From: Pristiophorus japonicus
Taxonomy: Eukaryota
DNA length: 64,000 nucleotides
Assembly: GCF_044704955.1 (NCBI RefSeq)
Contig: NC_091999.1
Location: 62,000,001-62,064,000 of the forward strand
Direction: 5' to 3'
The position numbers and the translations under genes are program-made. The notes beneath the pieces were generated by a model, which worked only from the letters and a program-made list of their open reading frames with translations, ran no database searches and was not told where the DNA came from. Of the stretch, positions 33,282 to 56,024 are shown one piece after another; positions within the stretch are counted from its first letter, which is position 1, and every line of letters begins with the position of its first letter.

Positions 33282-33363
33282 CAGAGCCAGCAGGATTCGT
33301 TCCTGCGCGGGGTAAACGCAAAGGATTTCTAGAAAATCGCGTTAACCACTCAGCCACAACTAC
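33282..33363 (-). tRNA. tRNA-Ser(AGA) pseudogene
   Basis: 82-nt paralogue of 29137-29218; T-loop and anticodon stem disrupted. Confidence 0.82.
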
Positions 33364-33582
33364 TGCGTCTCTGGCACTTTAAACGTTACTCAGAAAAAAC
33401 TCAGTCATCCATCTCTGTGCAGCAGACGGCCACAAAATCCTGAAAAAGTCTCCGTTTGCATAAAATCTGGAAGAGTCAATCTCCTCTTGCTATATCTTTA
33501 CTGTTCCATATTGCTCTGAAACTTTTTAATACGAATCTTTTCCAAGAAACAGAAGTAAAATTCGACATTTTGAAAAAGCTGC

Positions 33583-33654
33583 TTTTTCATTGGGGAATTG
33601 AACCCGGTTCTTCAACGTAACAGGCGGGGATACTCAACACTATGCGGACGAGAA
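33583..33654 (-). tRNA. tRNA-Asp(GTC)-derived pseudogene
   Basis: 72-nt colinear match with many substitutions. Confidence 0.8.
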
Positions 33655-34838: not shown

Positions 34839-34921
34839 TACCAGAAGGCGGGGTTGAACCCACGTGGGTATAAACCCATTACATCTTAAGTCTAACGCCT
34901 TTACCCCTCGGCCATCCTGGT
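34839..34921 (-). tRNA. tRNA-Leu(TAA) pseudogene
   Basis: Paralogue of 31418-31500; T-loop damaged. Confidence 0.83.
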
Positions 34922-36386
34922 CGTGATCATGTCAGTGGTTGGTCTCTACCTCGGTGAGAATCTGGGCTTCAGCTCCACCCCCACAGTGACACACAGACAC
35001 ATTGGATTTCAGGGAGCATTTACGAACATTTTTCGTAATATTGACACGGGTGCAGCTCTCCGATTCTTTTTCGACTAAGGCTCTGGGAACTTTCACATAC
35101 ACCCGAGGGGGCAGATGGAGCTTCAATTTAAAATTTCAGCCGATGGTCAACAGCTTCAACAATGCAACATTCCCCAAATACTGCATTTGACTGTCATCCA
35201 AGATGATGTTTTCAAGTCTCAGCAGTGGGACTTACACACACAACCTCCTGCTTCAGTCGAGAATGGAGCCACTGAACCAAAGTTCACAACCGTATTATTT
35301 CCCCAAGTTTTTTTAAAAGTTCCAGGACGTACCAAATTCATGGTGATGATTTCCACAGACATTTGCACATACACAGATACATACATACAGATAGACATAC
35401 ACAGATACACGCACACACAATAAGCAAAAATATACACGCATCAACATAGAAACATAGAAATTAGGTGCAGGAATATGACATTCGGCCCTTCGAACCTGCA
35501 CCACCATTCAATAAGATCATGGCTCATCATTCAACCTCTGTACCCATTTCCTGCTTTCTCTCCATGCCCCTTGATCTCTTTAGCCATAAGGGCCATATCT
35601 AACTCCCTTTTGATTATATCTAACGAACTGGCCTCAACGACTTTCTGCGGTAGAAAATTTCACAGGTTAACCACTCTCTGAGTGAAGAAGTTTCTCCTCA
35701 TCTCGGTCATAAATGGCTTACCCCTTATTTTTAGAATTTAATCCTTGGTCTCAAACACCCCAGCAACGAGAACATTCTTCCAGTCTCTAAGTTGTCCAAT
35801 CTCGTCAGAATTTTATATGTTTCTGTGTGATCCCCTCTCATTCTTCTAAACTCCAGTGGATACCAGTCCAGTTGATCCAGTCTCTCCTCAGATGTCAATC
35901 CTGCCATCCCGGGAATCATGCTGGTGAACCTTCGCTGTAATCCCTCAATAGCAAGTACGTCCTTTCTCAGATTCGGGGACCAAAACTGAACACAACATTC
36001 CAGGTATGGCCTCACCAAGGCCCTGTACAACTGCAGTAAGACATCCCTGCTCCTATACTCAAATCACCCAGCTATGAAGGCGAACATGCCATATATAGAG
36101 ATAGAGAGACACAGAGACACACACACACATAACCAAAAATTTGCACGCACCAACGGGCATGCACAGATGCCTTAGACATCTCGAGGGATATACAGGCTGA
36201 ATCACTGTCGCAACTTTGACTGATGTTTGCGATTTTTGAAACGGATGTATCGTGAATATTGCAGATTAATAAAAATGAGAATAAACTGTCAGTGTTGAAA
36301 GGTGTGGGACGTTATTCCATTTATCTCAGGATCAGTTTGCCAGAGAACCGGTTAAATTGTGAAATGGAATGAAAAATGCTGAGAAT

Positions 36387-36466
36387 CGTTGTCGGCAGGA
36401 TTCGAACCTGGCGGAATAACCCAATGGATTTCTCTTCCGTCGCGTTAACCACTCGGCCACGAGTAC
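36387..36466 (-). tRNA. tRNA-Ser(AGA) pseudogene
   Basis: A-box TGGCCGAGTGG and B-box GGTTCGAATCC intact; anticodon arm mutated; 2 nt shorter than canonical. Confidence 0.85.
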
Positions 36467-36707
36467 TGTGTCTTTCATGGACAGACAGAGTGAGTCAGAC
36501 TGAGAGAGACAAAGACTCAAACATCCCAACGCATGCACAGTTCTCTGAAGAGAGAGATGCAGAGACCGAGCGACACAAATGCATTTCATAATTTAATTTC
36601 ATTATCGGTTCAGAGTGTCACATTGTTACAGAAAATTGCTGATTCAACCGATGAAAATTCGGTTTTATTGATCAGAATGGGAGGAAATCCGTGTCAAATT
36701 GAAGAGA

Positions 36708-36790
36708 TACCAGGAGTAGGGCACGAACCCACGCGGGAAAAGCCCCATTCAATTTTAAGGACAACGCCTTAACCACTCGGCTACCCTAGC
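36708..36790 (-). tRNA. tRNA-Leu(TAA) pseudogene
   Basis: 83-nt match; T-loop and stems mutated. Confidence 0.82.
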
Positions 36791-36824
36791 CTGTGAAAAC
36801 CTTGTGAGTACAAGGTAGAGATTC

Positions 36825-37802
36825 ATAGAAACATAGAAACATAGAAACAAAGAAAATAGGTGCAGGAGCAGGCCATTCAGCCCTTCTAGCCTGCACCGCC
36901 ATTCAATGAGTTCATGGCTGAACATGAAACTTCAGTACCCCCTTCCTGCATTCTCATCATAACCCTTGATCCCCCGAGTAGTAAGGACTTCATCTAACTC
37001 TCTTTTGTATATATTTAGTGAATTGGCCTCAACTACTTTCACCACTCTCTGGGTGAAGAAGTTTCTCCTCATCTCGATCCTAAATGGCTTACCCCTTATC
37101 CTCAGACTGTGACCCCTGGTTCTGGACTTCCCCAACATTTGGAACATTCTTTCTGCATCTAACCTGTCTAAACCCGTCAGAATTTTAAACGTTTCCATGA
37201 GGTCCCCTCTCATTCTTCTGAACTCCAGTGAATACAAGCCCAGTTGATCCAGTCTTTCTTGATAGGTCAATCCCGCCATCCCGGGAATCAGTCTGGTGAA
37301 TCTTCGCTGCACTCCCTCAATAGCAAGAATGTCCTTGCTCAAGTTAGGAGACCAAAACTGTACACAATACTCCAGGTGTGGCCTCACCAAGGCCCTGTAC
37401 AACTGTAGCAACACCTCCCTGCCCCTGTATTAAAATCCCCTCGCTACAAAGGCCAACATGCCATTTGCTTTCTTAACCGCCTGCTGTACCTGCATGCTAA
37501 CCTTCAATGACTGATGTACCATGACACCCAGGTCTCGTTGCACCTTCCTTTTCCTAATCTGTCACCATTCAGATAATAGTCTGTCTCTCTGTTTTTACCA
37601 CCAAAGTGGATAACCTCACATTTACCCACATTATACTTCATCTGCCATGCATTTGCCCACTCACCTAACCTATCCAAGTCACTCTGCAGCCTCATAGCAT
37701 CCTCCTCGCAGCTCACACTGCCACCCATCTTAGTGTCATCCACAAATTTGGAGATACTGCATTTAATCCCCTCGTCTAAATCATTAATGTACAATGTAAA
37801 CA
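36825..37802 (-). mobile_element. 5'-truncated CR1 inside the tRNA array
   Basis: ORFs 36932..37414 and 37504..37806; (CATAGAAA)n tail at ~36825-36848. Confidence 0.93.
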
Positions 37803-37999
37803 ACACTCAGAAAAAACTCAGTCATCCATCTCTGTGCAGCAGACGGCCAAAGAATCGTGAAAAAGTCTCCGTTTGCTAAAAATCTGGAAGAGGCTCTATC
37901 TTCTACATGTACCTTTACAGTTCTTTCTTGCTCTGGAACTTTTTAATATGAATCTCTACCAAGAAACAGAAGTAAAATTCTATATTTTGAAACAACTGC

Positions 38000-38071
38000 C
38001 TCTCCGTCGGGGAATTGAACGCCGGTCTCTCGCGTGACAGGCGGGGTTACTCACCACTATACAAACGAGGA
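38000..38071 (-). tRNA. trnad-guc: tRNA-Asp(GTC), best-preserved copy, possibly a pseudogene
   Basis: About 6 differences from canonical vertebrate tRNA-Asp(GTC); anticodon intact; mismatches in D, anticodon and T stems. Confidence 0.9.
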
Positions 38072-38796
38072 ACTGTCGAGTGCCAGTTTTGTCAGAGCAG
38101 GAATCGAGCCAGTGTGAACAGAATTGGACACCATGAGAAGTCGACAGACACATTGAGAGACAGAGACAAACCGACAAACAGGGAGAGACGGACAGCGAGA
38201 TAGAGACAACGAGAGACAGAAAGTGTGAGACTGAGAAGGAGAGGCAGACTGAGTGAGAAAAAGACTCAAACATATACATATACAGAGATGTGTGTGTGTG
38301 ATCTATTAAGAGAGAGAGGGAAAGAATGAGAGAAAGACAATGATAAAGACAGTGACAAGGAGAGAGACAGATTGAGAGAGAGCGATAGAGACTAAAACAG
38401 AAAATGATGGAAATACTTCTCAGCTTACAGGCAGGGACTAACAGAGACAGCCAAAGACATGGACAGACCGAAATGATGGGAAAGAGAGAGCCAGTCAGGC
38501 AAAGAGTCTGAGAGAATCCCATTGGAACAGACGTGGCACCGTGAGAAAGAGACAGATTGAGAGACAGAGATAAACAGAGAAACAGGGACAGACAGAGAGA
38601 GACAAAGACTCAAACATATGCACAACACTCTGAAGAGAGAGAGAGAGGCAGAGACCGAGCGACACAGATACATTTCACAATTTCATTTCATTATCGGTTC
38701 AGAGTGTCACATTGTTACAGAAATTTGCTGATTCAACCGATGAAAATCCGGTCTCACTGATCAGAATGGGAGGAAATCCGTGTTAAATTAAAGAGA

Positions 38797-38878
38797 TACC
38801 AGGAGTCGGGTACGAACCCACGCGGGAAAAACCCATTGAATTTTAAGGCCAACGCCTCAACCACTCGGCTATCCTGGT
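38797..38878 (-). tRNA. tRNA-Leu(TAA) pseudogene
   Basis: 82-nt match; TAA anticodon retained; T-loop TTCGTA. Confidence 0.85.
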
Positions 38879-39461
38879 CCTGTGAGAGTCTGGATTCTGT
38901 CTCGTTGAGAATCTGGGCTTCAACCCCAACCCCACATACAAACGCATACAATTCGGCTTTCAGTGAGCATTTCCGAACATTTTTAGTAATATTGACACGG
39001 GTGCAATATCCAGATATTTTTGTTTTTGTATCCCCTCAAAACAATACTATTTAGATGATACTGCCTCTCCATGTTCCACCCAAAGTGCACCGCTTCTCAA
39101 TTATCCGCATTAAATTGCACCTGCCATGTCCCTGCCCATTTCACTCGTCTCTCTGATTCCTCTTCAAGTCTGTTACTATCATGCTCACTATTGGCTACGT
39201 AGCCATGTTTTGCTTCATCTTCGGACTTCAAGATGGAATCTCTATAACCAAGTCCAGGTCATTGTTATATAACAAGTACTACAAAGGGAATTGAAATGGG
39301 CCGTTTTAAGGAGAAACTTCCAATTAACCGGATTTTGGAATGGTATTTAATTCGAATCATTTATTGAGTGGGAGGAAGGAGGAAACTCAAGAAACGTCCA
39401 TTCAATAGAATGGAATAGAGCCCAGATCACAGTGCGCTGAGTAGGGAGAAACTGCTTCCGC

Positions 39462-39643
39462 TGTTTGGCGATGGACTACTAACCAAAAATCACCAGTTTT
39501 TCCTGAAAGAAAGATAAAATCATCAGCCTTTCCTGGAAGAACGAAAAAGAGCCGGTTAACCATCACCGAGTCAGAGGTGTGCAGCAGCACAATCTACTGC
39601 GAGGTTTGACGTGGTGTGTCGTTCTAGGCCATCACAATGCTAG
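39462..39643 (+). pseudogene. ighm: IgM CH1 exon remnant
   Basis: CLAMDY*PKITSFS*KKDK, duplicated IISLSWKNEKEP, internal deletion, LTITESEVCSSTIYCEV*RGVSF*AITML, donor G|GTTAGT at 39643; 5' end replaced by CR1-like sequence. Confidence 0.88.
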
Positions 39644-39722
39644 GTTAGTGATGTGGGATACAGGGCAAACTGTGATAAGATGAGAAGGTATGTTCAACTT
39701 GGACAGAAATTTGGTTAGACGA

Positions 39723-40129
39723 CACTTAGAGTGCTGTGTACAGTTCTGGTCTCCATATTACACTTGGAATGCTGTGTACAGTTCTGTTCTCCATATCACA
39801 CTTAGAGTACTGTGTATAGTTCTGGTCTCCCTATCGCACTTATAATACTGTGCACCGTTCTGGTCTCCCATATCACAATTAAAATACTGTGTATAGTTCT
39901 GGTCTCCCTATCATACTTTAAATATTATGCACAGTTATGGTTTCCATATCACATTTAGAATACTGTCCACAGTTCAGGTCTCCATATCATACTAAGAATA
40001 TTGTTTACAGTTTTGGTCTCCTAATCACTCTTGGAATACCGTGTAACGTTCTGGTCTCCAGATCATACTAAGAATATTATGCACAGTTCCGGTCTTCAGA
40101 TCACACTGAGAAGACTATGCACAGTTCTG
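39723..40129. repeat. 38-bp minisatellite (~10.5 copies) derived from CR1 ORF2 sequence
   Basis: Unit CACTTAGAGTACTGTGTACAGTTCTGGTCTCCATATCA matches the CR1 HLEYCVQFWSP coding motif. Confidence 0.9.
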
Positions 40130-40252
40130 CTCTCTGTAAATGCCAGGTTAGTGTTAGTCTGACAGCGAAGAACCTGTTAAAATATAAGGACACTTTGCAT
40201 TTCTTAATGATTGATTTTGCAAGCATTGTCAATAATTTGTCTTCTCTTGAAG

Positions 40253-40570
40253 ATCCTGAACGCGACATCATCCCTCCAACTGTTCTCCTCACGCTGAGTT
40301 CTACTGAACAAATCACCAGCAGCAGATATGCAAGCGCCGTGTGTTCAATCATCGATTTCCGGCCAAAGTCACTGACCGTGAATTGGTTGGAGAGTGGACA
40401 ACTCCTAGATTCGGGCTCCGTCACCTCTCCCGTATTTGAGGTGAACGGGAACTTCTCGGCGGCCAGTCGGCTGACAGTCCCCGCCGAGAAATGGTTCACC
40501 GGCTCGGTCTACACCTGCCAGGTCACTCATGAAGGGGTCACGCAAAGCCGTAACTTCATCAGATCTCCGG
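40253..40570 (+). CDS. ighm: IgM CH2 exon (open frame, part of the pseudogene)
   Basis: Acceptor TTGAAG|, donor G|GTAAG; PPTVLLT..VCSIIDF..VNWL..SRLTVP..WF..YTCQVTH Ig C1-set domain. Confidence 0.95.
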
Positions 40571-40759
40571 GTAAGAGGTACAATCCCAGGAGGTTACAGA
40601 CCATTCTGAGCGTTGATCTCAGTCAGGACTTTTATTGAAATTAGTAAAAAGCACCGAACTGTTCCTAATTTCCAATCATGCAGTTTGTGTATTATTGTGA
40701 TTACAAACTTGCCTAGAAACAGCGCCTTCAGCTACCTTAGTCTGAACCAAATCGCTTGC

Positions 40760-41130
40760 CAGCCAATGAATTAATTTGTGAAATGTGATCACAGTTGTAA
40801 TGTACAACGTGCAGCAATCATTTAGTGCACAGCAATCTCCCACAAACAGCAGTGTGATAATGACCAGATTATATTTTGCTTAGTGGTGTTTTTTGAGCTA
40901 TAAATATTCCCAGGCCACCAGGGAGAACTCCTCGGCTTTTCATTGAAATAATTCCAGGGGAACGTTTACGTCCACCTGAGGCCAGACGGATCCTCGGTTT
41001 AACACGTGATCCGAAAGACGGCACCTCCGATAGTGCACCACGCCCCCAGTACTGCACTGGGAATCTCAGCTTACATTTTGTGATCAAGTATCTGGAGTGG
41101 GACTTCAACCCACGATCTTCTGGTTCAGGA
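40760..41130 (-). mobile_element. DeuSINE-like (SacSINE1/AmnSINE1 family) SINE in the CH2-CH3 intron
   Basis: CTCGGTTTAAC..ATCCGAAAGACGGCACCTCCGA..CAGTACTGCACTGG..GGAGTGGGACTTCAACCCAC matches the remembered family consensus; fragments also at ~31640-31850, ~35070-35270 and ~54265-54352. Confidence 0.7.
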
Positions 41131-42536
41131 TTCCTCATTGTTCAGGATTTAATAAACTCGCCAACGAAGCTTTCCCCCTGCTCTGATTTCAGGCAGTGAG
41201 TAACGTGCCCTTATTCTCAGGTTTATCCTGAGTTGGCTGATCATATACGGAGTGGCAGTCGGAGTCTGGAACCCTTTACTGCTAACTGTCCAGGAACCCA
41301 CTGTTGGAATGGGCATCTACCCTATTCAGAGCGCTGAGTCCAATTCTGGGCTCCGCACCTCAGGAAGGATATACTGGTCATGGAGGCGATAAAGTTCAGG
41401 TTTACCCGAATTATACCGGGACTAATAAAATAAAATGATGAGGAGACGAGTAGAGAATATTAAGAGGTGATACAATTGAGGTGTTCAAGTAGATAAATAC
41501 AATTAATCAAGTAGATGTAGAACAATTATTTCCTTTGTTGGAAAAGTCCAGTACAAATAGCAGAATCTTAAAGTTAGAGCTGGATCGTGCAGAAGTGATG
41601 TCAGGAAGGATTTCTTCACAGAAAGTCTGGATTTCCCTCCCCAAAAGCTGCTGAAGCTTGGTTTCAATTGAAAAGTTGAAAAGTGAGATTGATAGATTTT
41701 TGTTAGGCAAGATTATCAAGGGTTACAGAACCAAGGCGTGAAGATGGTGTTGAGTGTAGATCAGCCCTGATATAACTGGATGGCGGGAGAGGATAGATGG
41801 GATGAATGGCCTCCTCCTGTTCCTATGTTGCTATTAATGCCCTGAGGTCATATTTAACTCTGACTCTCTCTCACCAGACATGATAAATGTTCAGTAATGA
41901 CAGAAATTAACAAACTACCTCACATCATTAAAAATGATGCCCCACCACAAAAGACCCTTTGGAACTCCATTCTCCGGACCTTGCACTTCTCCTCTGACGG
42001 GGGCTGTGACTGGTTCCTGCACATTTTCACCGCAATAAAGATCACAGCAAGTGACCAGAAACTTAGCTTTGTTTCCTGTTGTCCCATAAATCCTGAAATT
42101 AAATTGACACTTGTTTCGAACGAGAGTAATGCTGGTGTAGACCTCTTGACCTTCGGGCTATTTGGGCTTCACTATTACAACCAGCGGAGATGCGTTTGGA
42201 TGCAAGGATCTATAGATGGGTATAAAGGAGCAAGGGATTTCAGGAAGAGCGCTATTCAGTGCCTAACACAATTGCACCACAATGTATTCCCGTTTTACGC
42301 TGGTTATTTGCTTCACAGCCAATTACAGGTGACTCTGGCAGCAAATACACAGGAAATGTTACAGATCTCCCCGAATCGTTGCCAATTCATTGTCCTTCCA
42401 ATAACGTCGGTGTTAAAGCAACAGCGAGAGGTTGCTATCTCAAAAGTGATTTAGCCCCCTTGAACGAGTTAAGGCTAAATATTGTGTCCTGATTCTGAAG
42501 ATGCAGCTTTTCCTGACTTTCATTCCTGTTTTGCAG

Positions 42537-42834
42537 TGGATGTCCCATGCAGCGATTCAAAAATCACAGTCACTGGCACAGGACTTACGGGAGGCGACGG
42601 TGACCTTAACCTGCGTCGTGTCTGACGCTCCTTATGGGCTCACCGTTACCTGGACCAGACAAAAGGAGGCTTTGAAATCAGAGATTGCCGTCCAACCCGG
42701 TGAGGATCCCAACATAGTGATCAGCAACTTAAACATCTCGACACAAGACTCGCTGAGTGGGGATAAGTTCTGCTGCGTGGTGAGCCAGCAGGATATGCCG
42801 ACTCCTATCAGAGATTCTATCCACAAGGAAAAGG
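42537..42834 (+). pseudogene. ighm: IgM CH3 exon, frameshifted
   Basis: Acceptor TTGCAG|, donor G|GTGAG, length 298 nt (3n+1). [12 protein letters not shown] is out of frame with [28 protein letters not shown]; spliced frame stops at 42623-42625. Confidence 0.93.
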
Positions 42835-43714
42835 GTGAGCGGGGAGACTGTTGCAATAAGTCAGACACTGTGAATATTTCCGGTGCATGTTCAAGGGCCA
42901 ATTCATTACATAAAGTGCTTAATGGCTACTCTGATCATTCAGTTTGGTAATCCCACTCTTTGACCTGAGGTTATGTATTTTAGGGAAACTGGATAAGTCC
43001 ATGAGCGATAAAGGAATAGAAGGGTATGTTATTAGCGTTAGATGAACTGAGTCAGGTTGAGGCTTGTATGGAGCATAAACACAGGCATAGACCGGTTGGC
43101 CAAATCGCCTTGATCTGTGCAGTAAATTCAAGTCTAACCCTTCAAGATTTCAGAGAGAAAGATTATGTTCACTCTGCTGCGGGATGGTAAACCAGAGAGG
43201 CCCCAGAGGGGAAATAATAAAGCGTTAAATGTCAACGAAGAGCATATTTCTCTGACGTGTAACTACGGGACATTGGCGAATTTAAACGGAGAAGGCGAGT
43301 TGGTGGTGGTGGTCTCACAGGCCACCCGGGAGAAGAGGAGGATTGAAATCCGAGTGAGGAGCTCTCGGATCGCGGGGGGTGGGTTAGGCAGGGACCCTGG
43401 ATCCAGGAGGGAGGTGTAAGGGCAATAACCACCTGGGTGCAGCTGTAACTGCTGGGATTTACACAGTATGTCAAGCCGGACCAGCTACAGTTAAAAACCG
43501 AATAGAGGTTAAAATAGAGGATTCCAGCCTCCTATAAATATATTATTCAAATAAAATATTGCAACCAGGAGTGGTCGCGTTGATGTCGGGATCCCGATTT
43601 TTACCAATTTAATCACCCTCACAACCTCAACACGCCTGTTTTATTAGATTAAAACTCCCACCATTTTCTCTGGAACTGTCCAGTTCATTGGCCTTTATTG
43701 TAACTGTTCTACAG

Positions 43715-44097
43715 CGAAAGATCCATGGGAAGCAGCCGTGTCTGTCCTCCTGCCCTCGGCAGAAGAAGTCTCTGCTCAGAGGTTGGTCAGCCTCACCTGC
43801 TTAGTGAGAGGTTTCTCCCCCCGAGAGATCTTCGTCAAATGGACCGTCAAGGACAAGCCGGTCAACTACAAGAACACTGAGGTGATGGCGGAGAATGGCA
43901 GCAGATCATTCTTTGTGTACAGCCTGCTATCCATTGCAGCCAACGAGTGGGCCAGCGGCGCCTCTTACTCCTGTGTGGTTGGACATGAAGCGATCTCCTT
44001 GAAGATCACCAACAGAACCGTCAATAAATCCAGAGGTAAACCCAGTTTTGTGAATATTTCCCTTGTTCTGATGGACAACATCAATTCTTATCAATGA
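43715..44097 (+). CDS. ighm: IgM CH4 exon plus secretory tailpiece (open frame, part of the pseudogene)
   Basis: Acceptor CTACAG|; [47 protein letters not shown]; internal membrane-form donor G|GTAAA after 44035. Confidence 0.96.
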
Positions 44098-44125
44098 GAA
44101 TCTCTCGATTGCCTTTCAGTTCTTA

Positions 44126-44141
44126 AATAAAAAACAATAAA
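44126..44141 (+). terminator. Secretory-form polyadenylation signals (two AATAAA)
   Basis: AATAAA at 44126-44131 and 44136-44141, ~30 nt after the tailpiece stop. Confidence 0.75.
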
Positions 44142-44534
44142 GGCCTTTTCTTCCAATCGTGAGTTACACACACAGCCGCTCAATTAATATTGTTTCCTAT
44201 TTTAGCCAAGCGGCGGGCTGTTAATCTGAAGCAGAATATTTGTCGGACTTGTGGCCAAAGCTGGTACATTCAGCGCTCTCAGCTCATATATAGGTTGGAG
44301 ACAAAGAGAAGCTCTTTAATGACAGGATACCTCAAAGTCATTTCAGCAACTTTCGTCCCACTGGGAGAATCTGCATAGTTCTATTTCCCGATAAACAAAT
44401 GCTGTACATTTATATCTCGGTGCCCTTGTTTCTCGTGTTGTCCATCCCTTCAGATTTGGGGCCAGTTTTATTTGGCAGCATCGCACACTCTGGGATCTGA
44501 AATGAGGTCCACACACGAACACGAACTGTATCTC

Positions 44535-45530
44535 CCATCGCCCCACCAGAGAGAGATGAAATCGCAATTGTTATACCCCTGTACCTCCCACTACCCCACC
44601 AGAGAGGTGAAAGGGCAATTCTGAACCAACTGTACCTCCCACTGCACTACCAGAGAGAGATGAAAGGGCAATTATTCACCCACTGTAACGCCATTGCCGT
44701 ACCAAAGAGTGGTGAAATGGCAATTCTGAACCCACTGTACTTCCCACTGCCCCACCAGAGTGAGGGGAAACGGCAATTGTTAATCCACTGTAACCTCACT
44801 CCGTCTCTGCAAGATTCTACAAGTTCCCTGGCAGGACAGACGCGCCAACATTAGCGTCCTTGTCCAGGCCAACATCCCAGCAGCGAAGCACTGACCACAC
44901 TTGATCAGCTGCTCTGGGCCGGCCACATTGTCTGCACACCAGACACTAGACTCCCAAAGCAAGCGCTCTACTCGGAACTCGTCCATGGCAAATGAGCCAA
45001 AGGTGGGCAGGGGAAACGTTACAAGCGACCTCAAAGCCTCCTGATAAAGTGCGACATACCCACTGACACTTGAGAGTCCCTGGCCAAAGACCGCCCTAAA
45101 TGGAGGAAGTACATCCGGGAGGGCGCTGAGCCCCTCGTCTCTCGTCGCCAAGAGCATTCAGACATCAAGCGCAGGCAGTGGAAGGAACGTGCGGCAAACC
45201 TGTAAAATCTTCCCCTTCCCGCAACCACGGTCTTTCCCACCTGTGACAGAGACTGTGGTTCCCTATTGGACTGAACAGCCACCTAAGAAATCATGCTAAG
45301 AGTGGAAGTAGTCTTCCTTGATTGCGAGGGACTGCCTATGATGATGTAAACCCTCTTCCCCACCAGAGAGAGGGGAAAGGGCAATTGTTAACTTACTGTC
45401 CCGCCCACTACCCCAGCATAGTGAGGGGAATCTGCAATTGTTAACCCAATGTATCCGACTTCCGCACAAGCGAGAGGGCAAAGGGCAATTGTTAACTCAT
45501 TGTACCCCTCAATGCCACCAGAGAGAGATG
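44535..45530. repeat. ~55-60-bp minisatellite (CCCCACCAGAGAG..GAAAGGGCAATT..) interrupted by an RTE fragment
   Basis: Units on both sides of 44800-45347. Confidence 0.85.
44800..45347 (+). mobile_element. RTE-type LINE, 5'-truncated
   Basis: Degraded WQD..QL.WAGH..PKQ.LYSEL RTE-like motifs; 3' end GGGACTGCCTATGATGATG. Confidence 0.8.
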
Positions 45531-45654
45531 CTCATCGATTGAGTTGTTGTATTCCGTCGGCTGATGTCACATTGTGTCTCACACTGAACACATTTACACA
45601 GAGCGAGGAAGAATGCGTGTAAACGTTAGTAGTGTATGTTTTTGTGGAAGTTCA

Positions 45655-46280
45655 CACTTACACATAAACACAACACGGACTTACACATAAACACACAGCG
45701 ACTTACACATAAACACACACATTGACACACTGACACAAGATATTACGCATACCCAGAATATAATACACACTGTCATTGTCAGAACCACAGCACCATTAAT
45801 ATGACAGCAAAAATAAACACACCCTTTAATAAAACAGAAGCATGAACACACACACACACACACACAAACACACACACTTAAACTCGCATAAACACATATT
45901 CAACACAAACTAACTAACGGATAACACACACACACATTTACATGCGAACATACACAGTTACACATAAATGCACACATTCTTACCCATAAACATACACAAC
46001 ACTTACACATATCCATACACAAACACATTAAAACACATACATGAACGTACTTACAAAGAACACACATATTTAAGCATAACCACAAAAAATTGCATATATA
46101 CACACAAAGGCTTACATGTAAACATACACAAACTTACAAAAAATCACAAACACTTACACATAAATATACATATATGGAATGACACATTAAAACATTCAAA
46201 CTTACATATCAATACACATCAACGCACAAACACAGACAACACCAAAAGAAGAGATCGTCATACACACATACACAAACACT
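45655..46280. repeat. Degenerate (CA)-rich low-complexity tract
   Basis: Directly visible, in the CH4-TM1 intron. Confidence 0.9.
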
Positions 46281-46920
46281 AAAGTGCAAAAAATACGTCA
46301 GGTAACAGACGAACATAGAATTAAAATAAATTCTTTGAACAGACAGTCTGCAACGATTGTATTAAATAAATCATTTCTGATACCATAATATCTTACATTC
46401 CTATATTCTGGTCCTGCACACAAACTGAATCAAAGTTCTTAGTTGGAAACTCATGCAAATTAATTATGTTCAGAACCTTGACTACCACAAATTAATCCAG
46501 ATTATAACTCACATCTGATGTCTTACCCTGTCCCTTTGACAGCCTCCGAATAATTAGCTATCTGAAGCTATTGTTAAATTAATCGATATCATTCAGTATA
46601 GTTCCCTCGATATTACATCATACTATTCCCGAATGGTAAATCCTATGGAATTGATGCAAAATCAATTAGCCTGTAACATTGAAGGAAAACTGTCATATTT
46701 TCCAAAACCGACTATAGAAGGATCATAAAGAAGGAACGACTGTGGAATTAGGAACACAGATAGATTAGTGAGCGTGATTAACTTAACACAGGGCATACAT
46801 TGAACATTAAAATAGAGAACAAACTAACACCTTAAAGAAAGAAAATAGAATACGTAATAATAAGATGAGATCTTGGATTAACAAACGATCTGAATATATT
46901 TCCTTCCCTACATCCCGTAG

Positions 46921-47048
46921 ATTCCTCAGACCACATCTGGAGTGAAGAGTGTGAGGACGAGAGCAGCAACATCTGGACAACCGCTTCCACATTCATCATC
47001 TTGTTCTTCCTGAGCATTTCTTACAGCGCTGCCATCACTCTGGTGAAG
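46921..47048 (+). CDS. ighm: IgM transmembrane exon TM1
   Basis: Acceptor CCGTAG|, DSSDHIWSEECEDESSNIWTTASTFIILFFLSISYSAAITLVK, donor |GTGAG; conserved antigen-receptor TM motif. Confidence 0.95.
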
Positions 47049-47186
47049 GTGAGAAGATTCAATGCACTCAGTTCGAGTTGATTGAAGAGGTTTGACAAAT
47101 CTCTAAATGTTTCATTGATAACAACCCTGAAATTAATGCGCCAAATCACTAAAACGCTGCTTCAAACTTTTATCCCTCTTTAACAG

Positions 47187-47195
47187 GTCAAGTGA
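47187..47195 (+). CDS. ighm: IgM TM2 exon (VK*)
   Basis: TTTAACAG|GTCAAGTGA gives the KVK tail; AATAAA at 47254-47259 and 47605-47610. Confidence 0.9.
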   Translation, partial: VK

Positions 47196-47777
47196 TTGAC
47201 TGAATTTCGGCCGCTGTGGATTTTTCTCCTCTGGTTGTTAACTGTGTCTTGAAAATAAATTATGTCCTCTTGGTGATTCCCGGAGTCAATTGCCTTCAAC
47301 TTTTTCATTTCTCTGTTTGAAATGTGTGAGATAACCGTGGCTATAATGTAAATGTATCTCGGAGTTAAACAATTGTTTGAATATCTCATGTGTACATAAG
47401 TCATTTTGTCATTCATGATTCACAATTATTCCCTTCCCTTGGTGTTGAACATCTGTTTCTCTCCCTGATGTCTGTTAGAGTTGTACAGATAGCTGGCAGC
47501 TCAGACCGACTGTGTTCTGGTATTAATGTGACGCTCATTTGTTATATTCAATTTGTGTGAACTTTTGAAAACCTTCTCTGTAAATTGTTCTCTGTGAAAT
47601 TGTTAATAAAACTGCAATGGCAAATGGAATAAATTGGACTTTGCTGAACTCCTTACTCCAAGGCTCCTTCACATGTTCTATTTCCCTATCACATGTTGTT
47701 TTATTTCCATGAAATTTATTCTTCCCGCGTCCTATCCTGTTTGTGTTTGAATCCAAGTCCCTTCGGTTAAGGAGCCA

Positions 47778-47793
47778 CTGCGCCACCTAGTGT
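47778..47793 (-). promoter_or_regulatory. CTCF-like binding motif 3' of the IgM gene
   Basis: Minus strand ACACTAGGTGGCGCAG matches 13 of 14 positions of CCASYAGRKGGCRS. Confidence 0.65.
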
Positions 47794-47967
47794 CCCATCA
47801 GAGTGAAGGCACATTTTCCCCTGTCTTGTTGCATCATGCACCAGAGGCGGAATGACTGCACAGCGACCAGGCGGTCTCCTCTAATATTATGGTCTTTCAC
47901 GTGCCAGGTTATATTAAAGAGCAGGCCTCTGATGCACCAAAGTCCGATACAGTATAGTATGCGTCAG

Positions 47968-48277
47968 AGCAAATCTCCCTCTACTGTCCGAACAAACACT
48001 CTCAGGGCAGGTACAACACGGGTTAGATACAGAGTAAAGCTCCCTCTGCACTGTCCCATCAGAACTCCCAGGGCAGGTGCAGTACGGGTTAGATACAGAG
48101 AACAGCTCCATCTACACTTGCACTCCATACCCTCCCAGGGCAGGTACAGCACGGGTTTAATATAGAATAAATCTCCCTCTACACCGTCCCATCAAACACA
48201 CCCAGGGCAGGAGCAGCACGGGTTAAATACAGATTAAAGCTCACTCGATACTGTCCCATCAAACACTTCCAGACACA
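47968..48277 (-). repeat. ~67-bp satellite, ~4.5 copies
   Basis: CAGGGCAGG recurs at 48003, 48069, 48136 and 48203. Confidence 0.92.
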
Positions 48278-48711
48278 CTAGGGAGCACAAACTCTTGGAA
48301 TGATTCCCAAAGACTGGGGCCTAACTGACACACAGACAGGCGCTCCAATGTTTCTGTTATATACATACAGAAAGCCAAGAAAGAGACGACAGGTGGAGAG
48401 ACTTTTTTTGACAGAGAGGAGATGAGGGTTCACGCTGCATCTGCAGGTACATTTGGAGCTTTGTGCCCGTTGGGCACCTACATACAGAATGTGTGATGCA
48501 CGGGCAATATCAATTTCTGATGTAAAATCATTGTCGTTTTGTTCTGCCCAAATATACGATTGACATCCTCCTCTCTGGGAGGGCATTCGTAGAATGTAAG
48601 TTTTGTTTTCGATTCAACTCTTTAAAGGTGACCTGAATGCATATGGTCCACACAGACAGAAATGAGTACGGTAATCACTGCCAGCCGTTCTCCTTTATGA
48701 GGAACATACAT

Positions 48712-49520
48712 AAAAACATAAGAATATAAGAAATTGGAACAGGAGTAGGCCATACTGCATCTCGAGCCTGCTCCGCCATTCAATAATATCATGGCTGATA
48801 TGATAATGTCCTGAGCTCCACTTCCCTGCATGCTCCCCATAGCCCCTTATCGTTTAAAAAACTGTCTATTTCTATCATATGGTTATTCAATGTCCCAGCT
48901 TCCACGGCTCTCTGAGGCAGCGAAGTCCACAGATTTACAACCCTCTTAGAGAGGAAATTTCTCCTCATCTCTTTTTTAATTGGGCAGCCCCATATTTTAA
49001 GATCATGCCCTCTAATTCTAATCTCCCCCATCAGTGCAAACATCCTCTCTGCATCCACCTTGTCAAGCCCCCTCATAATCTGATACATTTCGATAAGATC
49101 ACATCTCATTGATCTGAATTCCAATGAGTCGAGGCCCAAACTACTCAACCTTTCCTCATAAGTCAACCCCCTCATCTCCGGAATCATCCGAGTGAACCTT
49201 CTCTGAACTGCCTCCAAAGCAAGTATATCCTTTCATAAATATGTAAACCAAAACCGCACACAGTTCCAGCTGTGGCCTCCCCAATATCCTGTATAACTGT
49301 AGCAAGACTTCCCTGCTTTTATACTCCATCCCCTTCACAATAATGGCCAAGATACCAATGGCCTTCCTGATCACTCGCTGTACCTGCATATCATCCTTTT
49401 CTGTTTCATGCACAAGTACCCCCAGGTCCCGCTGAACTGTGGCACTTTGCAATCTTTTTCCATTTAAATAATAACTGGCTCTTTGATTTTTTTCTGCCAA
49501 AGTGCATGATCTCAAATTAA
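48712..49520 (-). mobile_element. CR1 LINE 3' fragment
   Basis: ORFs 48789..49217 and 49156..49524; AACATAAGAA tail. Confidence 0.9.
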
Positions 49521-49554
49521 ACACGACCCGCTGTCACTTCTTCCCCGGACTGCC

Positions 49555-49825
49555 TTTCTGTCTGCTCTGCACTATTCCCTCTGATACCATCTCACTTAAC
49601 TCACTGAACATCAACCACGGATTTGTTCTCACTGCTCTGCTCCATTCCTTCTGATACCATCTCCCTGAACTCACTGAACATCTTCCTAGGGATCCTGCCT
49701 CCCTGCTCTGCTTCATTCCCTTTGATACCATTCGCTGAACTCACTGAACATCACCCTGGAGATCCTGTCTTCCTGCTCTGCGCCATTCCTTCTGATACTA
49801 TCAACGTGAAATCAGTGAACAAATC
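49555..49825. repeat. ~70-bp minisatellite, ~4 copies
   Basis: CTGCTCTGC recurs at 49562, 49632, 49703 and 49773. Confidence 0.9.
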
Positions 49826-50500
49826 CTACGGATACGGCAGTAACCTTCGAAGAAACAGCCAATCACTGTGCTATGATGTATGCGAGGAATTATGGCGTCA
49901 TCCACGGAATCCAGGTACGCAACTCAGTTGAAGTTAGTACCAGGGACACATATATTTCCTGATGTTTGATTTCTGATTTAAGCAAATTGGAAAAGGAGCC
50001 TGAGGTGAAAAGGGCCGAATTTATTGATGCAGTTATGATCAGGAATATACTACGTGAAAGAGTGGGGGGAAAGACTTAATATTAACTTTCAAAAGGGAAT
50101 TAGTTAAATATCTAAAGGGAGAAAATTGCAGGGCTTTCAGAAAAGATTGGGACTAATACAATAGCTCTTTCAAAGTGCCAGCACAGGCTTAATATTCTGA
50201 TTCTAGATCCGAGGTGATGCCAGCGAATGTTGTCATGCTGTTCTCACAATTAACTTTAGCTGCAACCAGTTGGCATCTGCTTCGTGTATGTCGCTAAGAT
50301 ACTCAACCTGCCCAATTGATTGGCTCTGCAGGACATTTCCCCGAGTATCAAGAAATCAGTTTATTGTGAGCCCTTCATACAGGAGACTGTCCTTTGGGTC
50401 CATCTCAGTGTGTGTCGGCTCACAGGAACCAATGTGGCAGGATCTGCCCGCCGTTATATACGACTTCAGCAGTCGGAGCCAAGATCTACAAAGTGGCGGG

Positions 50501-50539
50501 AGGTTCTGTACGAGGGTTGAACTGAGTTCCATCACTGTG
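50501..50539 (-). promoter_or_regulatory. Recombination signal sequence with 23-bp spacer
   Basis: Minus strand CACAGTG (50539-50533), 23 nt (50532-50510), ACAGAACCT (50509-50501; 6/9 to ACAAAAACC), abutting a V-like coding end. Confidence 0.85.
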
Positions 50540-50765
50540 AGCCCCAGGGCACGTTAAAAAAATTGCAGGTTCGGTCATCTGCAGCCCAGAGATGGTTAAA
50601 CTGGTAAACTTTGTCACAATTTAGAGATCTGCAGAGAAACGTCTCTGGCAAAATATATTACTTTCATAATAGCCGATGTATTTCACCAGAATAATCTCGG
50701 TAGCAGGTAGGTTGTGGTAAGTGTTCCCTGCGCTGGTTTAAATTATGCTAATTAAGAAGGACATT
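50540..50765 (-). pseudogene. TCR alpha/delta-type variable (V) segment pseudogene, inverted relative to IgM
   Basis: Minus strand: CYRDYSGE (degraded WYRQ motif), FAR/RFSADL*IVTKFTSLTISGLQMTEPAIF, then CGT GCC CTG GGG CT and the heptamer; reconstructs to ISGLQMTDSAIYYCALG. FR1 and leader not securely identified. Confidence 0.8.
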
Positions 50766-52767
50766 AAATGATGATTTAAATAAGTTTTACAGGTAAAATC
50801 CAATGGAGTTCGGTAATGCAGCCTCAATATGAGATTACGGTATATGAAGGAGATAAAGCTGAAATAAATGTACTTACAACACCAGTTCCGAAGATCCAGA
50901 TCGTTACTAGTACGCCTGCACCTGATCCCGGCAACGCAGTTTACCTTATACCGCAATAACACCAGGGAAATTGGTGCCGATTTTGCAAGAGGAAAATTCG
51001 ATGCTCGTCATTTAAATGAATATTAATTTTTCCTTTGTCAATTTTTGTAGCAGAAAATGAATACAGCGCCGTCTATTTCTGTTGACTGAGAATCACGGTG
51101 CTTCAAACTGATCGACTATGTAAAAAATTCCAGGGAAACCACAGACCAAACCAAGAAGATATCTGTCATCGAGCGATTCGATAAAGCAATATCTGTAATT
51201 GAGGGAACTTTTAAAACAACATGTTGAATTTTTTTTCATAACAGGGATGAGGGGATTCTGTGCAGGGACTGGAGAAGCTGGCATTGATCTCATTAAAACA
51301 GAGAAGGTTAAGAAGAGATTTAATAGAGTTGTTCAAAATTATGAAGAGTTTTGAGAGATTAAATTAGGGAAACTGTTTCCACTAGCAGAAGGGTCGGTAA
51401 CCAAAGGACAAAGATTTAAAGTAATTGGGAAAGGAACCACAGATGACACGAGGAAATATTATTTTACCAGGCGAGTTGCTTTGATCCGCAATGCAGAGCC
51501 TGAAAAGGGGGAGGAAGCAGAGTCAGTAGCAACGTTCAAAATTGAATTGTGTAAACACTTGAACGAATAAACGAACAGTTCTATGGCGGAATGCAAAGGT
51601 GTGGGACTAATTGAACAGCTCTTGCAAAGAGGAGGCACAAAGGATCGTAACGGCGTCCTTAGGTGTTGTATCATTCTACGTACGGGACCGTTGTCCCGCA
51701 GCAATGCTCCAATTCCCCTTGAATCATGCTGCAAGTCTCTTTACAGCAAATCATAAGAAGAAGCGTATTCGTGTCGACCAAAACACAGCGGGGTTAATGG
51801 AAGGAGTAGTTTGGAGAAGGTTCTTTCACAGAGCGAGCACAGACAAGATTGGTCAGACGACCTCCTTCAATGCTGTATTATTGTGTGATTCTATATGTCA
51901 AGCACCATCCGGAATTTTCATTTATCGTTGTTACTTTATTGTCCATGGGTTGAAATACTGGAACTTCCTACGTGACATCACATTCACCACATGGACTGCA
52001 GCGGTGCAAGGAGAAAGCCCACCAACACTTTTTCAAGGGCAGCCAGTAATGCACAATAAATTCCGGCCTTGCCATCTACGCCCATATCTCGAGAATAGAT
52101 ACAAACATCTAAGAGAAACAGCGGGTATAGAAGGACAATCACCAAGTTAAACATTTCTTGGTTTCTGTCATTTTTGCTTTCTTTTACTATTACCTTATTT
52201 TGTTCTCTTACGCTTCTTGTTCTTTCTCCATTTCAATCTTTCTCTCCTCTCTCACACTTTCTCTCGTTCACTCTATTTACTGATTCCAATTTCTTCTTTT
52301 GCAATATTCATAACGTTGAATGGTTAAATTGCATCCCCGAATATTTTCTTATTTTGAACAAGTGAGGTGCAGTTGGGAGGGAGGCTTGAATTACCATTCA
52401 GAAATACTACCCAGAGCAATGCTCCTCCAAAATCTGTGTAACTCCTCCTTTATTGTTACTGAGTGGCATTCTGAGTGATGCGCCAAATTCACATGAGAGG
52501 GAGGAGAGTAACTACATCGTGGCGATTCGTCAATCCTATTCAAATGCTGTTACCCAATTAAAGAATTTGGTGCCTTTTACCAGGAAAGGAATTGCATGCA
52601 ATGCTTCTTTACTTTCTGTTATACCTCCCTGCCAAACAGTTGCTCACTTTACTGAGTATAGCAGCTTGCAATGGGAAATAGAATTTCAATTTTAAGGTGT
52701 TGTTGGTGACGTTGTAAGTGCGCCCATATCGTACCATCATATCATTATATTGTGGCTGGTGCAGGAT

Positions 52768-54706: not shown

Positions 54707-55616
54707 TTATAATTTGATTAATTTTATAAAGAGATTCATTGGATATTTCAGCGCATCCATTAACTCCTCTCTGAATTTACTCTGGATCACTGCATAAATA
54801 CACGTGTTTGTGCAGGAACTCAAAAGCTGAAGACTATTTCCGGTTTCTTGGAGAATACATTTTGGGTCTTTGAAATTGGAACCTGAGAAATAATTATTCT
54901 TTGTAATTCGGACATACAAGAAATTTACAACGTACACTGTCCATAATAGGATGAAACTGCCTGAGATGGTAAAGAGTAAAACGATGGACTTTCTCCGTCT
55001 CTCCATCTCTGGGTCGCTTTGATTCTCTCCACTGCTATGGGCCCGGAGCCTCCTGCGGGCTCTGCTGGTCGCTAGAATATGTCTGACGGTCAGAGCATTG
55101 AGCAGCAATATCAGGAGAAAGGGGAGTCATGGCGTTAAAATTCTGTCAAGCCAGTCATATACTATCCATAGAGGAGAAGTATAAAATATTACTTTGATGT
55201 TACATAACCACGGGACATTGTCAGTTATGAACATAGGTCCATATGTGAGATAAGAAGGAATGTTTTTTAAACAGCTCAGGGAACCGACCATGACTATAAT
55301 CAGAGCCGCATTTTTCTCAGTGCAATATTTTGTTTCAATTTCTGGCATCATATGGCCACAAATCGATCGAAGGTGAAAGCGACCGTTAACCAGACGGAAC
55401 TATCCGTGGCGACATAAATTAGGATAGATGTTATAGTACAGCCTGGAGTGGTGGACAGCAGACTAAATTGAAGATAAATTCCACTGATCCGGTTTAATAT
55501 CACAGCGGTGATAATGACCAGGAGATCTGCCACTGCCATGGACAGCAGGTACCAAGTGATACATCTGGAAAGACCGCACTTTCCTCGGGACAGGTTCACA
55601 ATTGTCACCAAGTTAG
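54707..55616 (-). pseudogene. GPR139/GPR142-like class A GPCR, main exon, pseudogenised
   Basis: Acceptor TTCTTGCAG| at 55616; NLVTIVNLSRGKCGLS, MAVADLL, TVAFTFDRFVAI, RRKSIVLLF, NTCIY; stops at 55348-55350 and 55127-55129 plus a 1-nt frameshift; first exon not found. Confidence 0.9.
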
Positions 55617-56024
55617 CTGCAAGAAAGAGACAGAAAAGAAATCAGTAACATTATGTATCACTCCTCCTAGATGTTTATTTATTTTGATCATATTTCAGTC
55701 TTAGATACTTCACCTCGCAATGGGAATTATTCAGTTACCTGTCGGCAGAGATTGATCTGTTAAGATTTGAATAGTGTTTGAGGAAGGGAAGCGGGAACAG
55801 CGAATGTGAAGGAGCGAGGGCGGACTGAAGCAATGAATGAGGAGCAGGACACTGAGAACAGGCCATGGAGTTTTAGGTGCAGCTTCGTGACTAAAACTGT
55901 TTATCGTTCACTGATTGTCAACCATTTACTGACGCAGAATATCCCTTCATTAAATGCATGGCTAAAATCACACGTCAATCATGCAATCATTAAATCAGTT
56001 CAGAAATTCGATCATATAGACTAA

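What the first reader, a model, noticed from the sequence alone, without database searches (positions are those of the whole stretch)
39462..50765. Inverted TCR alpha/delta-type V segment with a 23-RSS only 3.3 kb behind an IgM constant gene
Seen: a decayed V framework 3 on the minus strand (RFSADL*IVTKFTSLTISGLQMT.., reconstructing to DSAIYYCAL) ends at CACAGTG-N23-ACAGAACCT, 3306 bp after the IgM TM2 stop and facing the IgM gene. The ORF track misses it. Established: YYCAL endings are typical of TCR alpha/delta V rather than VH; sharks make IgH-V/TCR-delta chimeric rearrangements; inverted V segments 3' of a C gene rearrange by inversion in mammals (TRDV3, TRBV30). Inference: either an IgM cluster embedded antisense in a TCR alpha/delta V array, or a duplicated cassette in which a TCR V could have joined IgH D-J by inversion, giving a reverse chimera (TCR V on IgM C). 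Both parts are dead here, so a working version would have to be in paralogous copies.
Basis: partly seen in the sequence, partly recalled or inferred. Interest (0 to 1): 0.9.

Follow-up and report, generated by a model that had tools for sequence, protein, structure and literature searches.

The report
Dead TCR-type V behind dead IgM gene
A long-dead T-cell-receptor-type V gene segment, still carrying its recombination signal, lies tail-to-tail 3.3 kb behind a broken shark IgM constant gene; this mixing of antibody clusters with TCR V segments in sharks was published in 2025, so the finding is real but ordinary.

Summary
IgM TM2 ends at 47195. On the minus strand a V pseudogene (V exon about 50858-50540) ends in CACAGTG, a 23-base spacer and ACAGAACCT (50539-50501), exactly 3306 bp away and pointing at the IgM 3' end.

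The RSS alone is no better than chance (1 match, 0.69 expected). The RSS directly after an RFSA...Cys framework-3 reading is not chance (1 found, 0.007 per shuffle).

The V has at least four stops, at least two frame changes and a roughly 39-base duplication in CDR1. The IgM gene has no V, D or J in the 39 kb upstream, and its CH1 is shattered. No J, D, second V or TCR constant exon lies in the 64 kb.

I could not prove the TCR alpha/delta class. The 23-RSS, the FR2 reading (YR.YSGE..RLL, no GLEW) and the FR3 length argue against IgL and VH, so TCR-type is likely (about 0.65).

Flajnik et al. 2025 (PMC12227049) already report TCR alpha/delta-type V exons between elasmobranch IgH clusters. Other unchecked first-reader notes describe the same adjacency elsewhere on this scaffold. 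Nothing supports the "reverse chimera" idea. Low interest.

The parts
39462..39609 (+). Remnant of IgM CH1 (CLAMDY*PKITSFS*KKD..., then RLTITESEVCSSTIYCEV* in another frame). It has stops and a frameshift, and its 5' third is missing.
   Evidence: Three-frame translation. No stop-free segment of 60 aa or more here. The comparison with the shark C-mu-1 motifs is from memory.
40253..40570 (+). IgM CH2 exon, open, 318 nt, with AG/GT borders
   Evidence: Pfam C1-set E 4.2e-17; borders read
42553..42834 (+). IgM CH3 exon, open. The acceptor may instead be at 42537.
   Evidence: Pfam C1-set E 4.9e-06; 48% identity to P0005; borders read
43715..44097 (+). IgM CH4 exon with secretory tail [20 protein letters not shown]. 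Tyr stands where, from memory, the mu tail has its penultimate Cys.
   Evidence: Pfam C1-set E 1.1e-19; 72-79% identity to shark C-mu-4 proteins
46921..47048 (+). IgM TM1 exon, open (…NIWTTASTFIILFFLSISYSAAITLVK)
   Evidence: 71% identity to the TM part of P0011
47187..47195 (+). IgM TM2 (Val-Lys-stop); AATAAA follows at 47254-47259
48708..49518 (-). LINE (reverse-transcriptase 3' part) fragment in the spacer between IgM and the V
   Evidence: 65-86% identical copies at seven or more other places in the window; RT-tail ORFs
50075..50215 (.). Very high-copy interspersed repeat fragment, 286 bp beyond the nonamer. It bounds the V block on one side.
   Evidence: Summed contig depth 10,000-50,000 against about 75-150 beside it
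50501..50539 (-). 23-RSS: heptamer CACAGTG (50539-50533), 23-base spacer, nonamer ACAGAACCT (50509-50501; 6/9 to ACAAAAACC)
50540..50858 (-). V-exon pseudogene. Cys23 is at 50790-50788. CDR1 carries a roughly 39-nt AT-rich duplication with a stop (TAA 50740-50738). FR2 (YRDYSGEIHRLL) is frame-shifted and W41 is lost. Further stops are TGA 50666-50664, TAA 50660-50658 and TAA 50623-50621. A T7 run lies at 50562-50556 just before the second Cys.
   Evidence: Joint motif test. Contigs from the DNA runs show 6-, 7- and 8-T forms, and no listed variant removes a stop, though 40 variant rows were not shown.
50859..51011 (-). Possible leader intron (acceptor ...TTTATTTCAG, 50868-50859) and a decayed leader (ATG at 51011; donor candidates 50951 and 50945). 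No convincing signal peptide is left.
   Evidence: read by eye only

Best explanation
This is a solitary, long-dead V gene segment of the T-cell-receptor type, most likely alpha/delta-type. It keeps a recognisable 23-RSS and lies tail-to-tail 3.3 kb behind an IgM constant pseudogene that has no V, D or J and a broken CH1.

It does nothing now. It is debris from the interleaving of IgH miniclusters with TCR alpha/delta-type V exons along the elasmobranch antigen-receptor chromosome, produced by duplication and reshuffling and since broken up by LINE and other repeat insertions.

Shown here: the V anatomy, the RSS, the defects, the dead CH1, and the absence of any partner segment.

Inferred: the TCR class (from the RSS type and framework hallmarks) and the origin (from the published locus picture).
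For: - V relic and RSS. The joint FR3-Cys-heptamer signature occurs once against 0.007 per shuffle.
- Defects: at least four in-frame stops, at least two frame changes and a CDR1 duplication.
- Neutral drift: the homopolymer next to the second Cys occurs as 6, 7 and 8 T in contigs of DNA runs of the same species, and none of the listed variants removes a stop.
- IgM gene: C1-set exons, mu tail and TM exons. CH1 is shattered.
- No partner: no VH, JH, second V or J motif in the 64 kb.
- Against IgL: a 23-RSS on a V is the lambda type only (PMC5985310), and shark lambda is germline joined (PMC12227049).
- Against VH: FR2 reads YR.YSGE..RLL without GLEW.
- Unchecked first-reader notes report the same adjacency at many other places on this scaffold.
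Against: - No homology search could place the V among TRAV/TRDV.
- Pfam V-set does not score the pieces.
- PDB phmmer of the FR3 piece gives only weak lambda light-chain hits (best E 0.16) and no TCR hit at E up to 10. The FR2 and middle pieces hit nothing relevant.
- The exhaustive HMMER search returned only unrelated repeat proteins.
- The 'DSA' and 'YYCAL' hallmarks are reconstructed, not present.
- Beta and gamma V segments share the 23-RSS and the RFSA/DSA motifs.
Confidence: 0.65

Rival explanations
1. The V is an IgH-type or 'intermediate' V, either TAILV-like or the VH of a lost neighbouring cluster in the opposite orientation, rather than a TCR alpha/delta-type V.
For: IgH V segments also carry a 23-RSS. 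The RF-to-Cys length of FR3 (30-31 residues) fits VH as well as TRAV. [quoted passage not shown] The element sits next to an IgM gene.
Against: FR2 reads YR.YSGE..RLL, not W-V/I-R-Q-x-P-G-K-G-L-E-W. FR3 starts RFSA-L, not RFT-SKD, and ends E-P-A, not E-D-T-A. No D or J RSS lies within the 3.3 kb downstream of it on its own strand.
Confidence: 0.12
2. The V is an orphan light-chain (lambda-type) V relic.
For: The only database hits of the FR3 piece are lambda light chains, through SLTISGLQ (E 0.16-1.7). Lambda V segments carry a 23-RSS. Some IgL genes are linked to this chromosome region in elasmobranchs.
Against: The hits are not significant and rest on one 8-residue motif. From memory, the RF-to-SL spacing is two residues longer than in kappa or lambda, and the G-I/V-P-x-RFSGS motif is absent (RFSADL instead). 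Shark lambda genes are V-J joined in the germline (PMC12227049), whereas this V has a free RSS. No J or C lies downstream on its strand.
Confidence: 0.08
3. The IgM gene plus inverted TCR-type V is a cassette that works, or recently worked, by inversional joining of the V to IgH D-J. That would give TCR-V/IgM-C chains; this copy is a dead paralogue.
For: The geometry mirrors TRDV3 and TRBV30, which lie inverted 3' of their C genes. Unchecked first-reader notes describe a 'TCR V with 23-RSS facing a V-less IgM constant gene' at three or more other places. Ig-V to TCR D-J-C chimeras exist in nurse shark (PMC5931798, citing Criscitiello 2010).
Against: Nothing here is functional. The V has stops and frameshifts, CH1 is broken, and there is no D, J or 12-RSS. 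The V block is low copy at 80% likeness or more, so it is not an amplified young cassette. No TCR-V/C-mu transcript turned up in the papers I read, and no RNA run was available.
Confidence: 0.03
4. Chance resemblance: a random heptamer/nonamer next to a random reading frame.
For: The RSS pattern alone is expected 0.69 times per window. No profile or database search recognises the pieces as V-set.
Against: The joint signature occurs 0.007 times per shuffle. In addition, an acceptor site, the first Cys 23 codons after it, and the FR2-like and FR3-like strings all lie in the right order and at the right spacing. The nearest Atlas clusters are V-set fragments, a weak lead at 0.81.
Confidence: 0.03

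Closest known systems
TCR alpha/delta-type V exons lying between IgH miniclusters in the elasmobranch antigen-receptor complex (Flajnik et al., Sci Adv 2025, PMC12227049)
   Same: A V exon of apparent TCR type sits next to an IgM cluster on a chromosome that, by other unchecked scan notes, also carries TCR alpha/delta and NAR-TCR elements. [quoted passage not shown]
   Different: Here both neighbours are pseudogenes, and the IgM unit lacks V, D and J. The species of the window is not known to me, and the paper's coordinate table was not available as text.
Inverted V segments 3' of a constant gene: human TRDV3 / mouse Trdv5 and human TRBV30 / mouse Trbv31 (from memory; the arrangement is mentioned in PMC12227049)
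   Same: The V is in the opposite orientation downstream of a C gene, with a 23-RSS pointing back at it.
   Different: Those V segments are intact and join by inversion to the D-J of their own locus. This one is dead, of a different receptor class from the C gene, and has no D-J partner.
TAILV / VH-delta: IgH-like V segments inside TCR delta loci, and Ig-V to TCR D-J-C trans-rearrangements in nurse shark (Criscitiello 2010, as cited in PMC5931798 and PMC12227049)
   Same: Ig and TCR gene segments are mixed in one neighbourhood.
   Different: The direction is the opposite (TCR-type V beside an Ig constant gene), and there is no evidence that it is used.

Membership tests
Rearranging V gene segment (V-set exon plus RSS) | Leader, short intron, then a V exon entered through a splice acceptor | tested here: inconclusive
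   A good acceptor, TTTATTTCAG, lies at 50868-50859, 23 codons before the first Cys. The leader itself is not convincing (ATG 51011, no hydrophobic core).
Rearranging V gene segment (V-set exon plus RSS) | Conserved Cys23, Trp41 and Cys104 at the right spacing | tested here: inconclusive
   Cys23 is present (50790-50788). Trp41 is lost (TGC where TGG is expected, with a 1-nt deletion). The second Cys is present in one frame (TGC) or is CGT in the 'RALG' frame. The spacing is right only after discounting a roughly 39-nt duplication.
Rearranging V gene segment (V-set exon plus RSS) | RSS directly after the coding end | tested here: met
   CACAGTG, 23 bases, then ACAGAACCT begins 3 codons after the Cys. 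The joint signature occurs 0.007 times per shuffle.
Rearranging V gene segment (V-set exon plus RSS) | Significant match to the V-set profile or to known V domains | tested here: not met
   Pfam gave no hit for any stop-free piece. The best PDB E-value was 0.16. The tools do not accept a read-through of the stops, so the whole domain could not be scored.
TCR alpha/delta V (TRAV/TRDV) | Groups with TRAV/TRDV rather than IGHV, IGLV, TRBV or TRGV in a search or a tree | not testable with these tools
The exhaustive HMMER search returned only unrelated proteins.
TCR alpha/delta V (TRAV/TRDV) | 23-bp spacer RSS on the V | tested here: met
   IGHV, TRBV, TRGV and lambda V segments share this feature.
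TCR alpha/delta V (TRAV/TRDV) | Framework hallmarks: WYRQ-type FR2 without GLEW, and FR3 RF[ST]A-L-K...SL-I...LQ..DSA-Y-C-A-L | tested here: inconclusive
   Present: YR.YSGE..RLL, and RFSADL(*)IVTKFTSLTISGLQ. Not present as written: DSA (it reads EPA) and YYCAL (it reads IFLTC, or FF*RALG). The hallmarks are recalled from memory. The CAL ending also occurs in nurse shark gamma V1.
TCR alpha/delta V (TRAV/TRDV) | Lies in a TRA/TRD locus, upstream of D-delta/J/C | tested here: not met
   No other V, J or TCR C exon lies in the 64 kb. By unchecked notes, the TCR-like constant exons are about 56 Mb away.
Functional inverted V 3' of C (TRDV3 / TRBV30 type) | Open V exon, a D/J partner with a 12-RSS upstream of the C gene, and a working C gene | tested here: not met
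   The V has at least 4 stops and at least 2 frame changes. There is no D or J. CH1 is broken.
Shark IgM minicluster (VH-D1-D2-JH-Cmu1-4-TM1-2) | Cmu2-4, secretory tail, TM1 and TM2 | tested here: met
Shark IgM minicluster (VH-D1-D2-JH-Cmu1-4-TM1-2) | VH, D and JH upstream, and an intact Cmu1 | tested here: not met
   No VH or JH motif or RSS set lies in the 39 kb upstream. Cmu1 has stops and a frameshift.

The most novel reading that the evidence does not exclude
The unit 'IgM constant gene plus an inverted TCR-type V with a 23-RSS behind it' may be a recurring architecture of this chromosome rather than an accident. It could be an old V-(D)-J-C-inverted-V ground plan shared with the TCR beta and delta loci, or a duplicated cassette whose intact copies join a TCR-type V to IgH D-J by inversion and make TCR-V/C-mu chains. 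My data do not exclude this, because I could not read the other copies. Several unchecked first-reader notes describe similar pairs elsewhere in the genome.
Probability: 0.04. Interest if true: 0.8.

Novelty: already known. Interest (0 to 1): 0.18.

Why it matters
On its own it matters little. It is one more dead example of a published pattern: elasmobranch IgH clusters interleaved with TCR alpha/delta-type V exons. That pattern is used to argue that Ig and TCR loci arose in one antigen-receptor complex, and to explain Ig-TCR trans-rearrangements.

The only open point with some value is whether 'inverted V behind the constant gene' recurs systematically at IgM clusters. A whole-assembly comparison would answer that cheaply.

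Tried and rejected
1. Pfam on four stop-free pieces of the V gave no family.

2. PDB phmmer on three pieces. The FR3 piece gave only weak lambda light-chain hits and spurious Fab heavy-chain hits. The other two pieces gave nothing relevant.

3. Exhaustive HMMER search of 1.84 billion proteins with the 44-aa stop-free FR3 stretch. The two hits were a bacterial DUF7507 repeat protein and an acorn-worm hemicentin, both irrelevant.

4. ESM Atlas look-alikes. The nearest clusters were short V-set fragments at 0.80-0.81, below the level that means anything.

5. CH4 homologue search, meant to reach paralogous or orthologous IgM clusters and read what lies behind them.

7. Read laying. All four runs are short contigs (150-700 nt over this stretch) from one DNA sample, so they cannot bridge 47195-50540. 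No RNA run held the stretch, so expression and chimeric transcripts could not be tested.

8. No supplementary table of PMC12227049 is held as text.

9. I did not build or search a joined CH2-CH3-CH4-TM model. Of the constant exons, only CH4 went to the large homologue search. CH2, CH3 and CH4 were each scanned against Pfam.

10. I sent no read-through of the V (with or without X).

11. Rejected: a VH of an inverted neighbouring cluster (no D or J behind it, and the wrong FR2).

12. Rejected: the 12-RSS-like site at 47246-47219 as a joining partner. It has the same orientation as the V's RSS, an imperfect heptamer, and is of a kind expected by chance.
Full report
**What is there**

The window is elasmobranch DNA rich in LINE and LTR debris. 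It contains no N and no lower-case masking.

On the + strand lies one IgM constant gene, and only one (tblastn with shark C-mu fragments). Its parts are:
- CH2, 40253-40570.
- CH3, about 42553-42834.
- CH4 with the mu secretory tail, 43715-44097.
- TM1, 46921-47048.
- TM2 (GTCAAGTGA), 47187-47195.
- AATAAA at 47254.

CH4 is 72-79% identical to C-mu-4 of Chiloscyllium and sandbar shark.

CH1 survives only as a shattered remnant from 39462. It reads CLAMDY*PKITSFS*..., then RLTITESEVCSSTIYCEV* in another frame.

Nothing resembling VH, D or JH lies in the 39 kb upstream. That stretch is LTR and LINE elements plus roughly 4-kb tandem units. The secretory tail has Tyr where, from memory, the penultimate Cys should be. 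So the IgM unit is a headless pseudogene, as another first-reader note also says.

**The V**

On the minus strand, 3306 bp beyond the TM2 stop, a 23-RSS is present. The heptamer CACAGTG is at 50539-50533, the spacer is 23 bases, and the nonamer ACAGAACCT is at 50509-50501.

Directly 5' of it the frame reads RRFSADL*IVTKFTSLTISGLQMTEPAIFLTCPGA. Further 5', in order and at roughly the right spacing, come:
- An FR2-like YRDYSGEIHRLL in a shifted frame. The expected Trp codon reads TGC, next to a 1-nt deletion.
- A CDR1 region bloated by a roughly 39-nt AT-rich duplication that carries a stop.
- A first Cys in PLDFTCKTY (TGT 50790-50788).
- A strong acceptor, TTTATTTCAG (50868-50859), 23 codons before that Cys.
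- A poor candidate leader (ATG 51011).

I count at least four stops (TAA 50740-38, TGA 50666-64, TAA 50660-58, TAA 50623-21) and at least two frame changes.

**Is it more than chance?**

The bare RSS is not. At up to 3 mismatches to the consensus there is 1 match against 0.69 expected. It is, though, the only site in the window with a perfect heptamer and a 6/9 nonamer.

The RSS abutting an RF[ST][AGV]...Cys reading is beyond chance: 1 observed against 0.007 per Markov shuffle (the test was designed after seeing the site). Together with the acceptor, the first Cys and FR2 in register, I take the V relic as real, with about 0.9 confidence.

No profile method confirms it. The pieces between stops are 27-38 aa, and the tools do not take a read-through. 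Pfam gave nothing. PDB gave at best E 0.16. The Atlas gave V-set fragment clusters at 0.81, a lead only.

**Which class of V?**

I could not bring in any shark TCR or Ig V references.
- The exhaustive HMMER search with the 44-aa FR3 stretch found only a bacterial repeat protein and a hemicentin.
- The weak PDB hits are lambda light chains, through the motif SLTISGLQ. I report this as evidence against the TCR reading, though it is not significant.

Three arguments favour a TCR-type V.
1. Among light chains only the lambda type has a 23-RSS on V. Kappa-type loci are 12/23 (PMC5985310), and shark lambda is germline V-J joined (PMC12227049). This V has a free RSS and no J or C behind it.
2. FR2 lacks the VH 'GLEW' core, and FR3 begins RFSA-L rather than RFT-SKD.
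3. From memory of reference sequences, the RF-to-SL spacing is that of TRAV/TRDV and VH, two residues longer than in kappa or lambda.

The CAL-type ending is not specific to alpha/delta. The nurse shark primer table lists delta-V ends AVYHCAL, ALYYCAF and AIYYCA, but also gamma-V1 TATYYCAL (PMC5931798).

My odds are: TCR-type about 0.75, with alpha/delta taking most of that because of the published context; IgH-type or intermediate about 0.12; lambda-type about 0.08.

**Surroundings**

The V sits in a low-copy block of about 1 kb (50216-51241). On one side is a very high-copy repeat fragment (50075-50215; summed contig depth 10,000-50,000 against about 75-150). On the other is another interspersed repeat, from 51242.

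Between IgM and the V lie two short tandem arrays (47965-48272 and 49556-49833) and a LINE fragment (48708-49518).

No J motif, no FR2 or FR3 motif and no second RSS of quality occurs anywhere else in the 64 kb. At this scale the V is solitary and is not part of an array.

**Reads**

The four holders are contig sets from one DNA sample of the same species, and no RNA run held the stretch.

Over the V they give two to four contigs per run at 80% likeness or more. One form is nearly identical to the window and one is about 5-6% different. A few low-depth contigs are 82-85% alike.
- The T run next to the second Cys occurs as 6, 7 and 8 T.
- None of the listed variants removes a stop, though 40 variant rows were not shown.

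This fits neutral drift of an old pseudogene in a small V family, not a young amplified cassette. The contigs are too short to test the 47195-50540 join.

**How it works**

It does not. The V is dead, its neighbour is dead, and there is no 12-RSS partner. The RSS may still be a cryptic RAG target, but that is speculation.

The most economical origin is the one already in print. [quoted passage not shown]

First-reader notes from this scan, none of which I checked, report IgM relics beside TCR alpha/delta-type V segments at many other places on this scaffold. Three or more of them describe a 'V with 23-RSS facing a V-less IgM constant gene'. So this scan has met the same pattern before, on other DNA of this genome.

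**Comparison and verdict**

The geometry resembles TRDV3 and TRBV30, which lie inverted behind their C genes. However, every defining feature of a working inverted V fails here: no open frame, no D-J partner, no working C gene.

The known shark chimeras run the other way, from an Ig V to TCR D-J-C. I found no report of TCR-V/C-mu chains and have no data for them.

The kind of thing is already known, so interest is low.

What remains worth a cheap check is whether an inverted V behind the constant gene recurs in register at other IgM clusters.

**Limits**

Noticed in passing
window 54710-55641 (-): Rhodopsin-family GPCR (Pfam 7tm_1, E 1.4e-08 and 5.3e-06 on two pieces) broken by one in-frame stop (55127-55129) and one frameshift (around 55351-55399). 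It is probably a single-exon GPCR pseudogene, 4 kb beyond the V.
   Followed up: partly
window 27600-39000: About three tandem copies of a roughly 4.1-kb unit (for example, matching sites at 27820/31965, 28836/32960 and 31129/34562/38537). The units carry LINE RT tails and long Ser/Leu/Cys-rich simple-sequence ORFs, and they fill the space where the J-to-Cmu1 intron and the VDJ of the IgM cluster would be.
   Followed up: no
window 43715-44097 (+): The IgM secretory tail reads ...[11 protein letters not shown], with Tyr in place of the penultimate Cys that, from memory, mu tails use for polymerisation. CH2-CH4 and TM1/TM2 are otherwise open although CH1 is destroyed.
   Followed up: partly
window 50556-50562: The homopolymer (T7 on the minus strand) just before the V's second Cys is length-polymorphic (6, 7 or 8) in contigs of DNA runs of the same species. 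One form over 50481-50642 differs from the window at about 6% of positions.
   Followed up: partly
window 21271-25000 (+): Long open pol-like frames (406 aa and 334 aa, then an integrase-like HVWWPGIDADL... segment) of an LTR retrotransposon. There is also a GC-rich (about 63%) LINE-like element with an 845-aa open frame at 60576-63110.
   Followed up: no
window 47778-47793: Another first-reader note calls this a strong CTCF-like site between the IgM 3' end and the V. I did not test it.
   Followed up: no
window 47965-48272 and 49556-49833: Two short tandem arrays (units of about 65-70 bp, 77-83% alike) in the spacer between IgM TM2 and the V.
   Followed up: no
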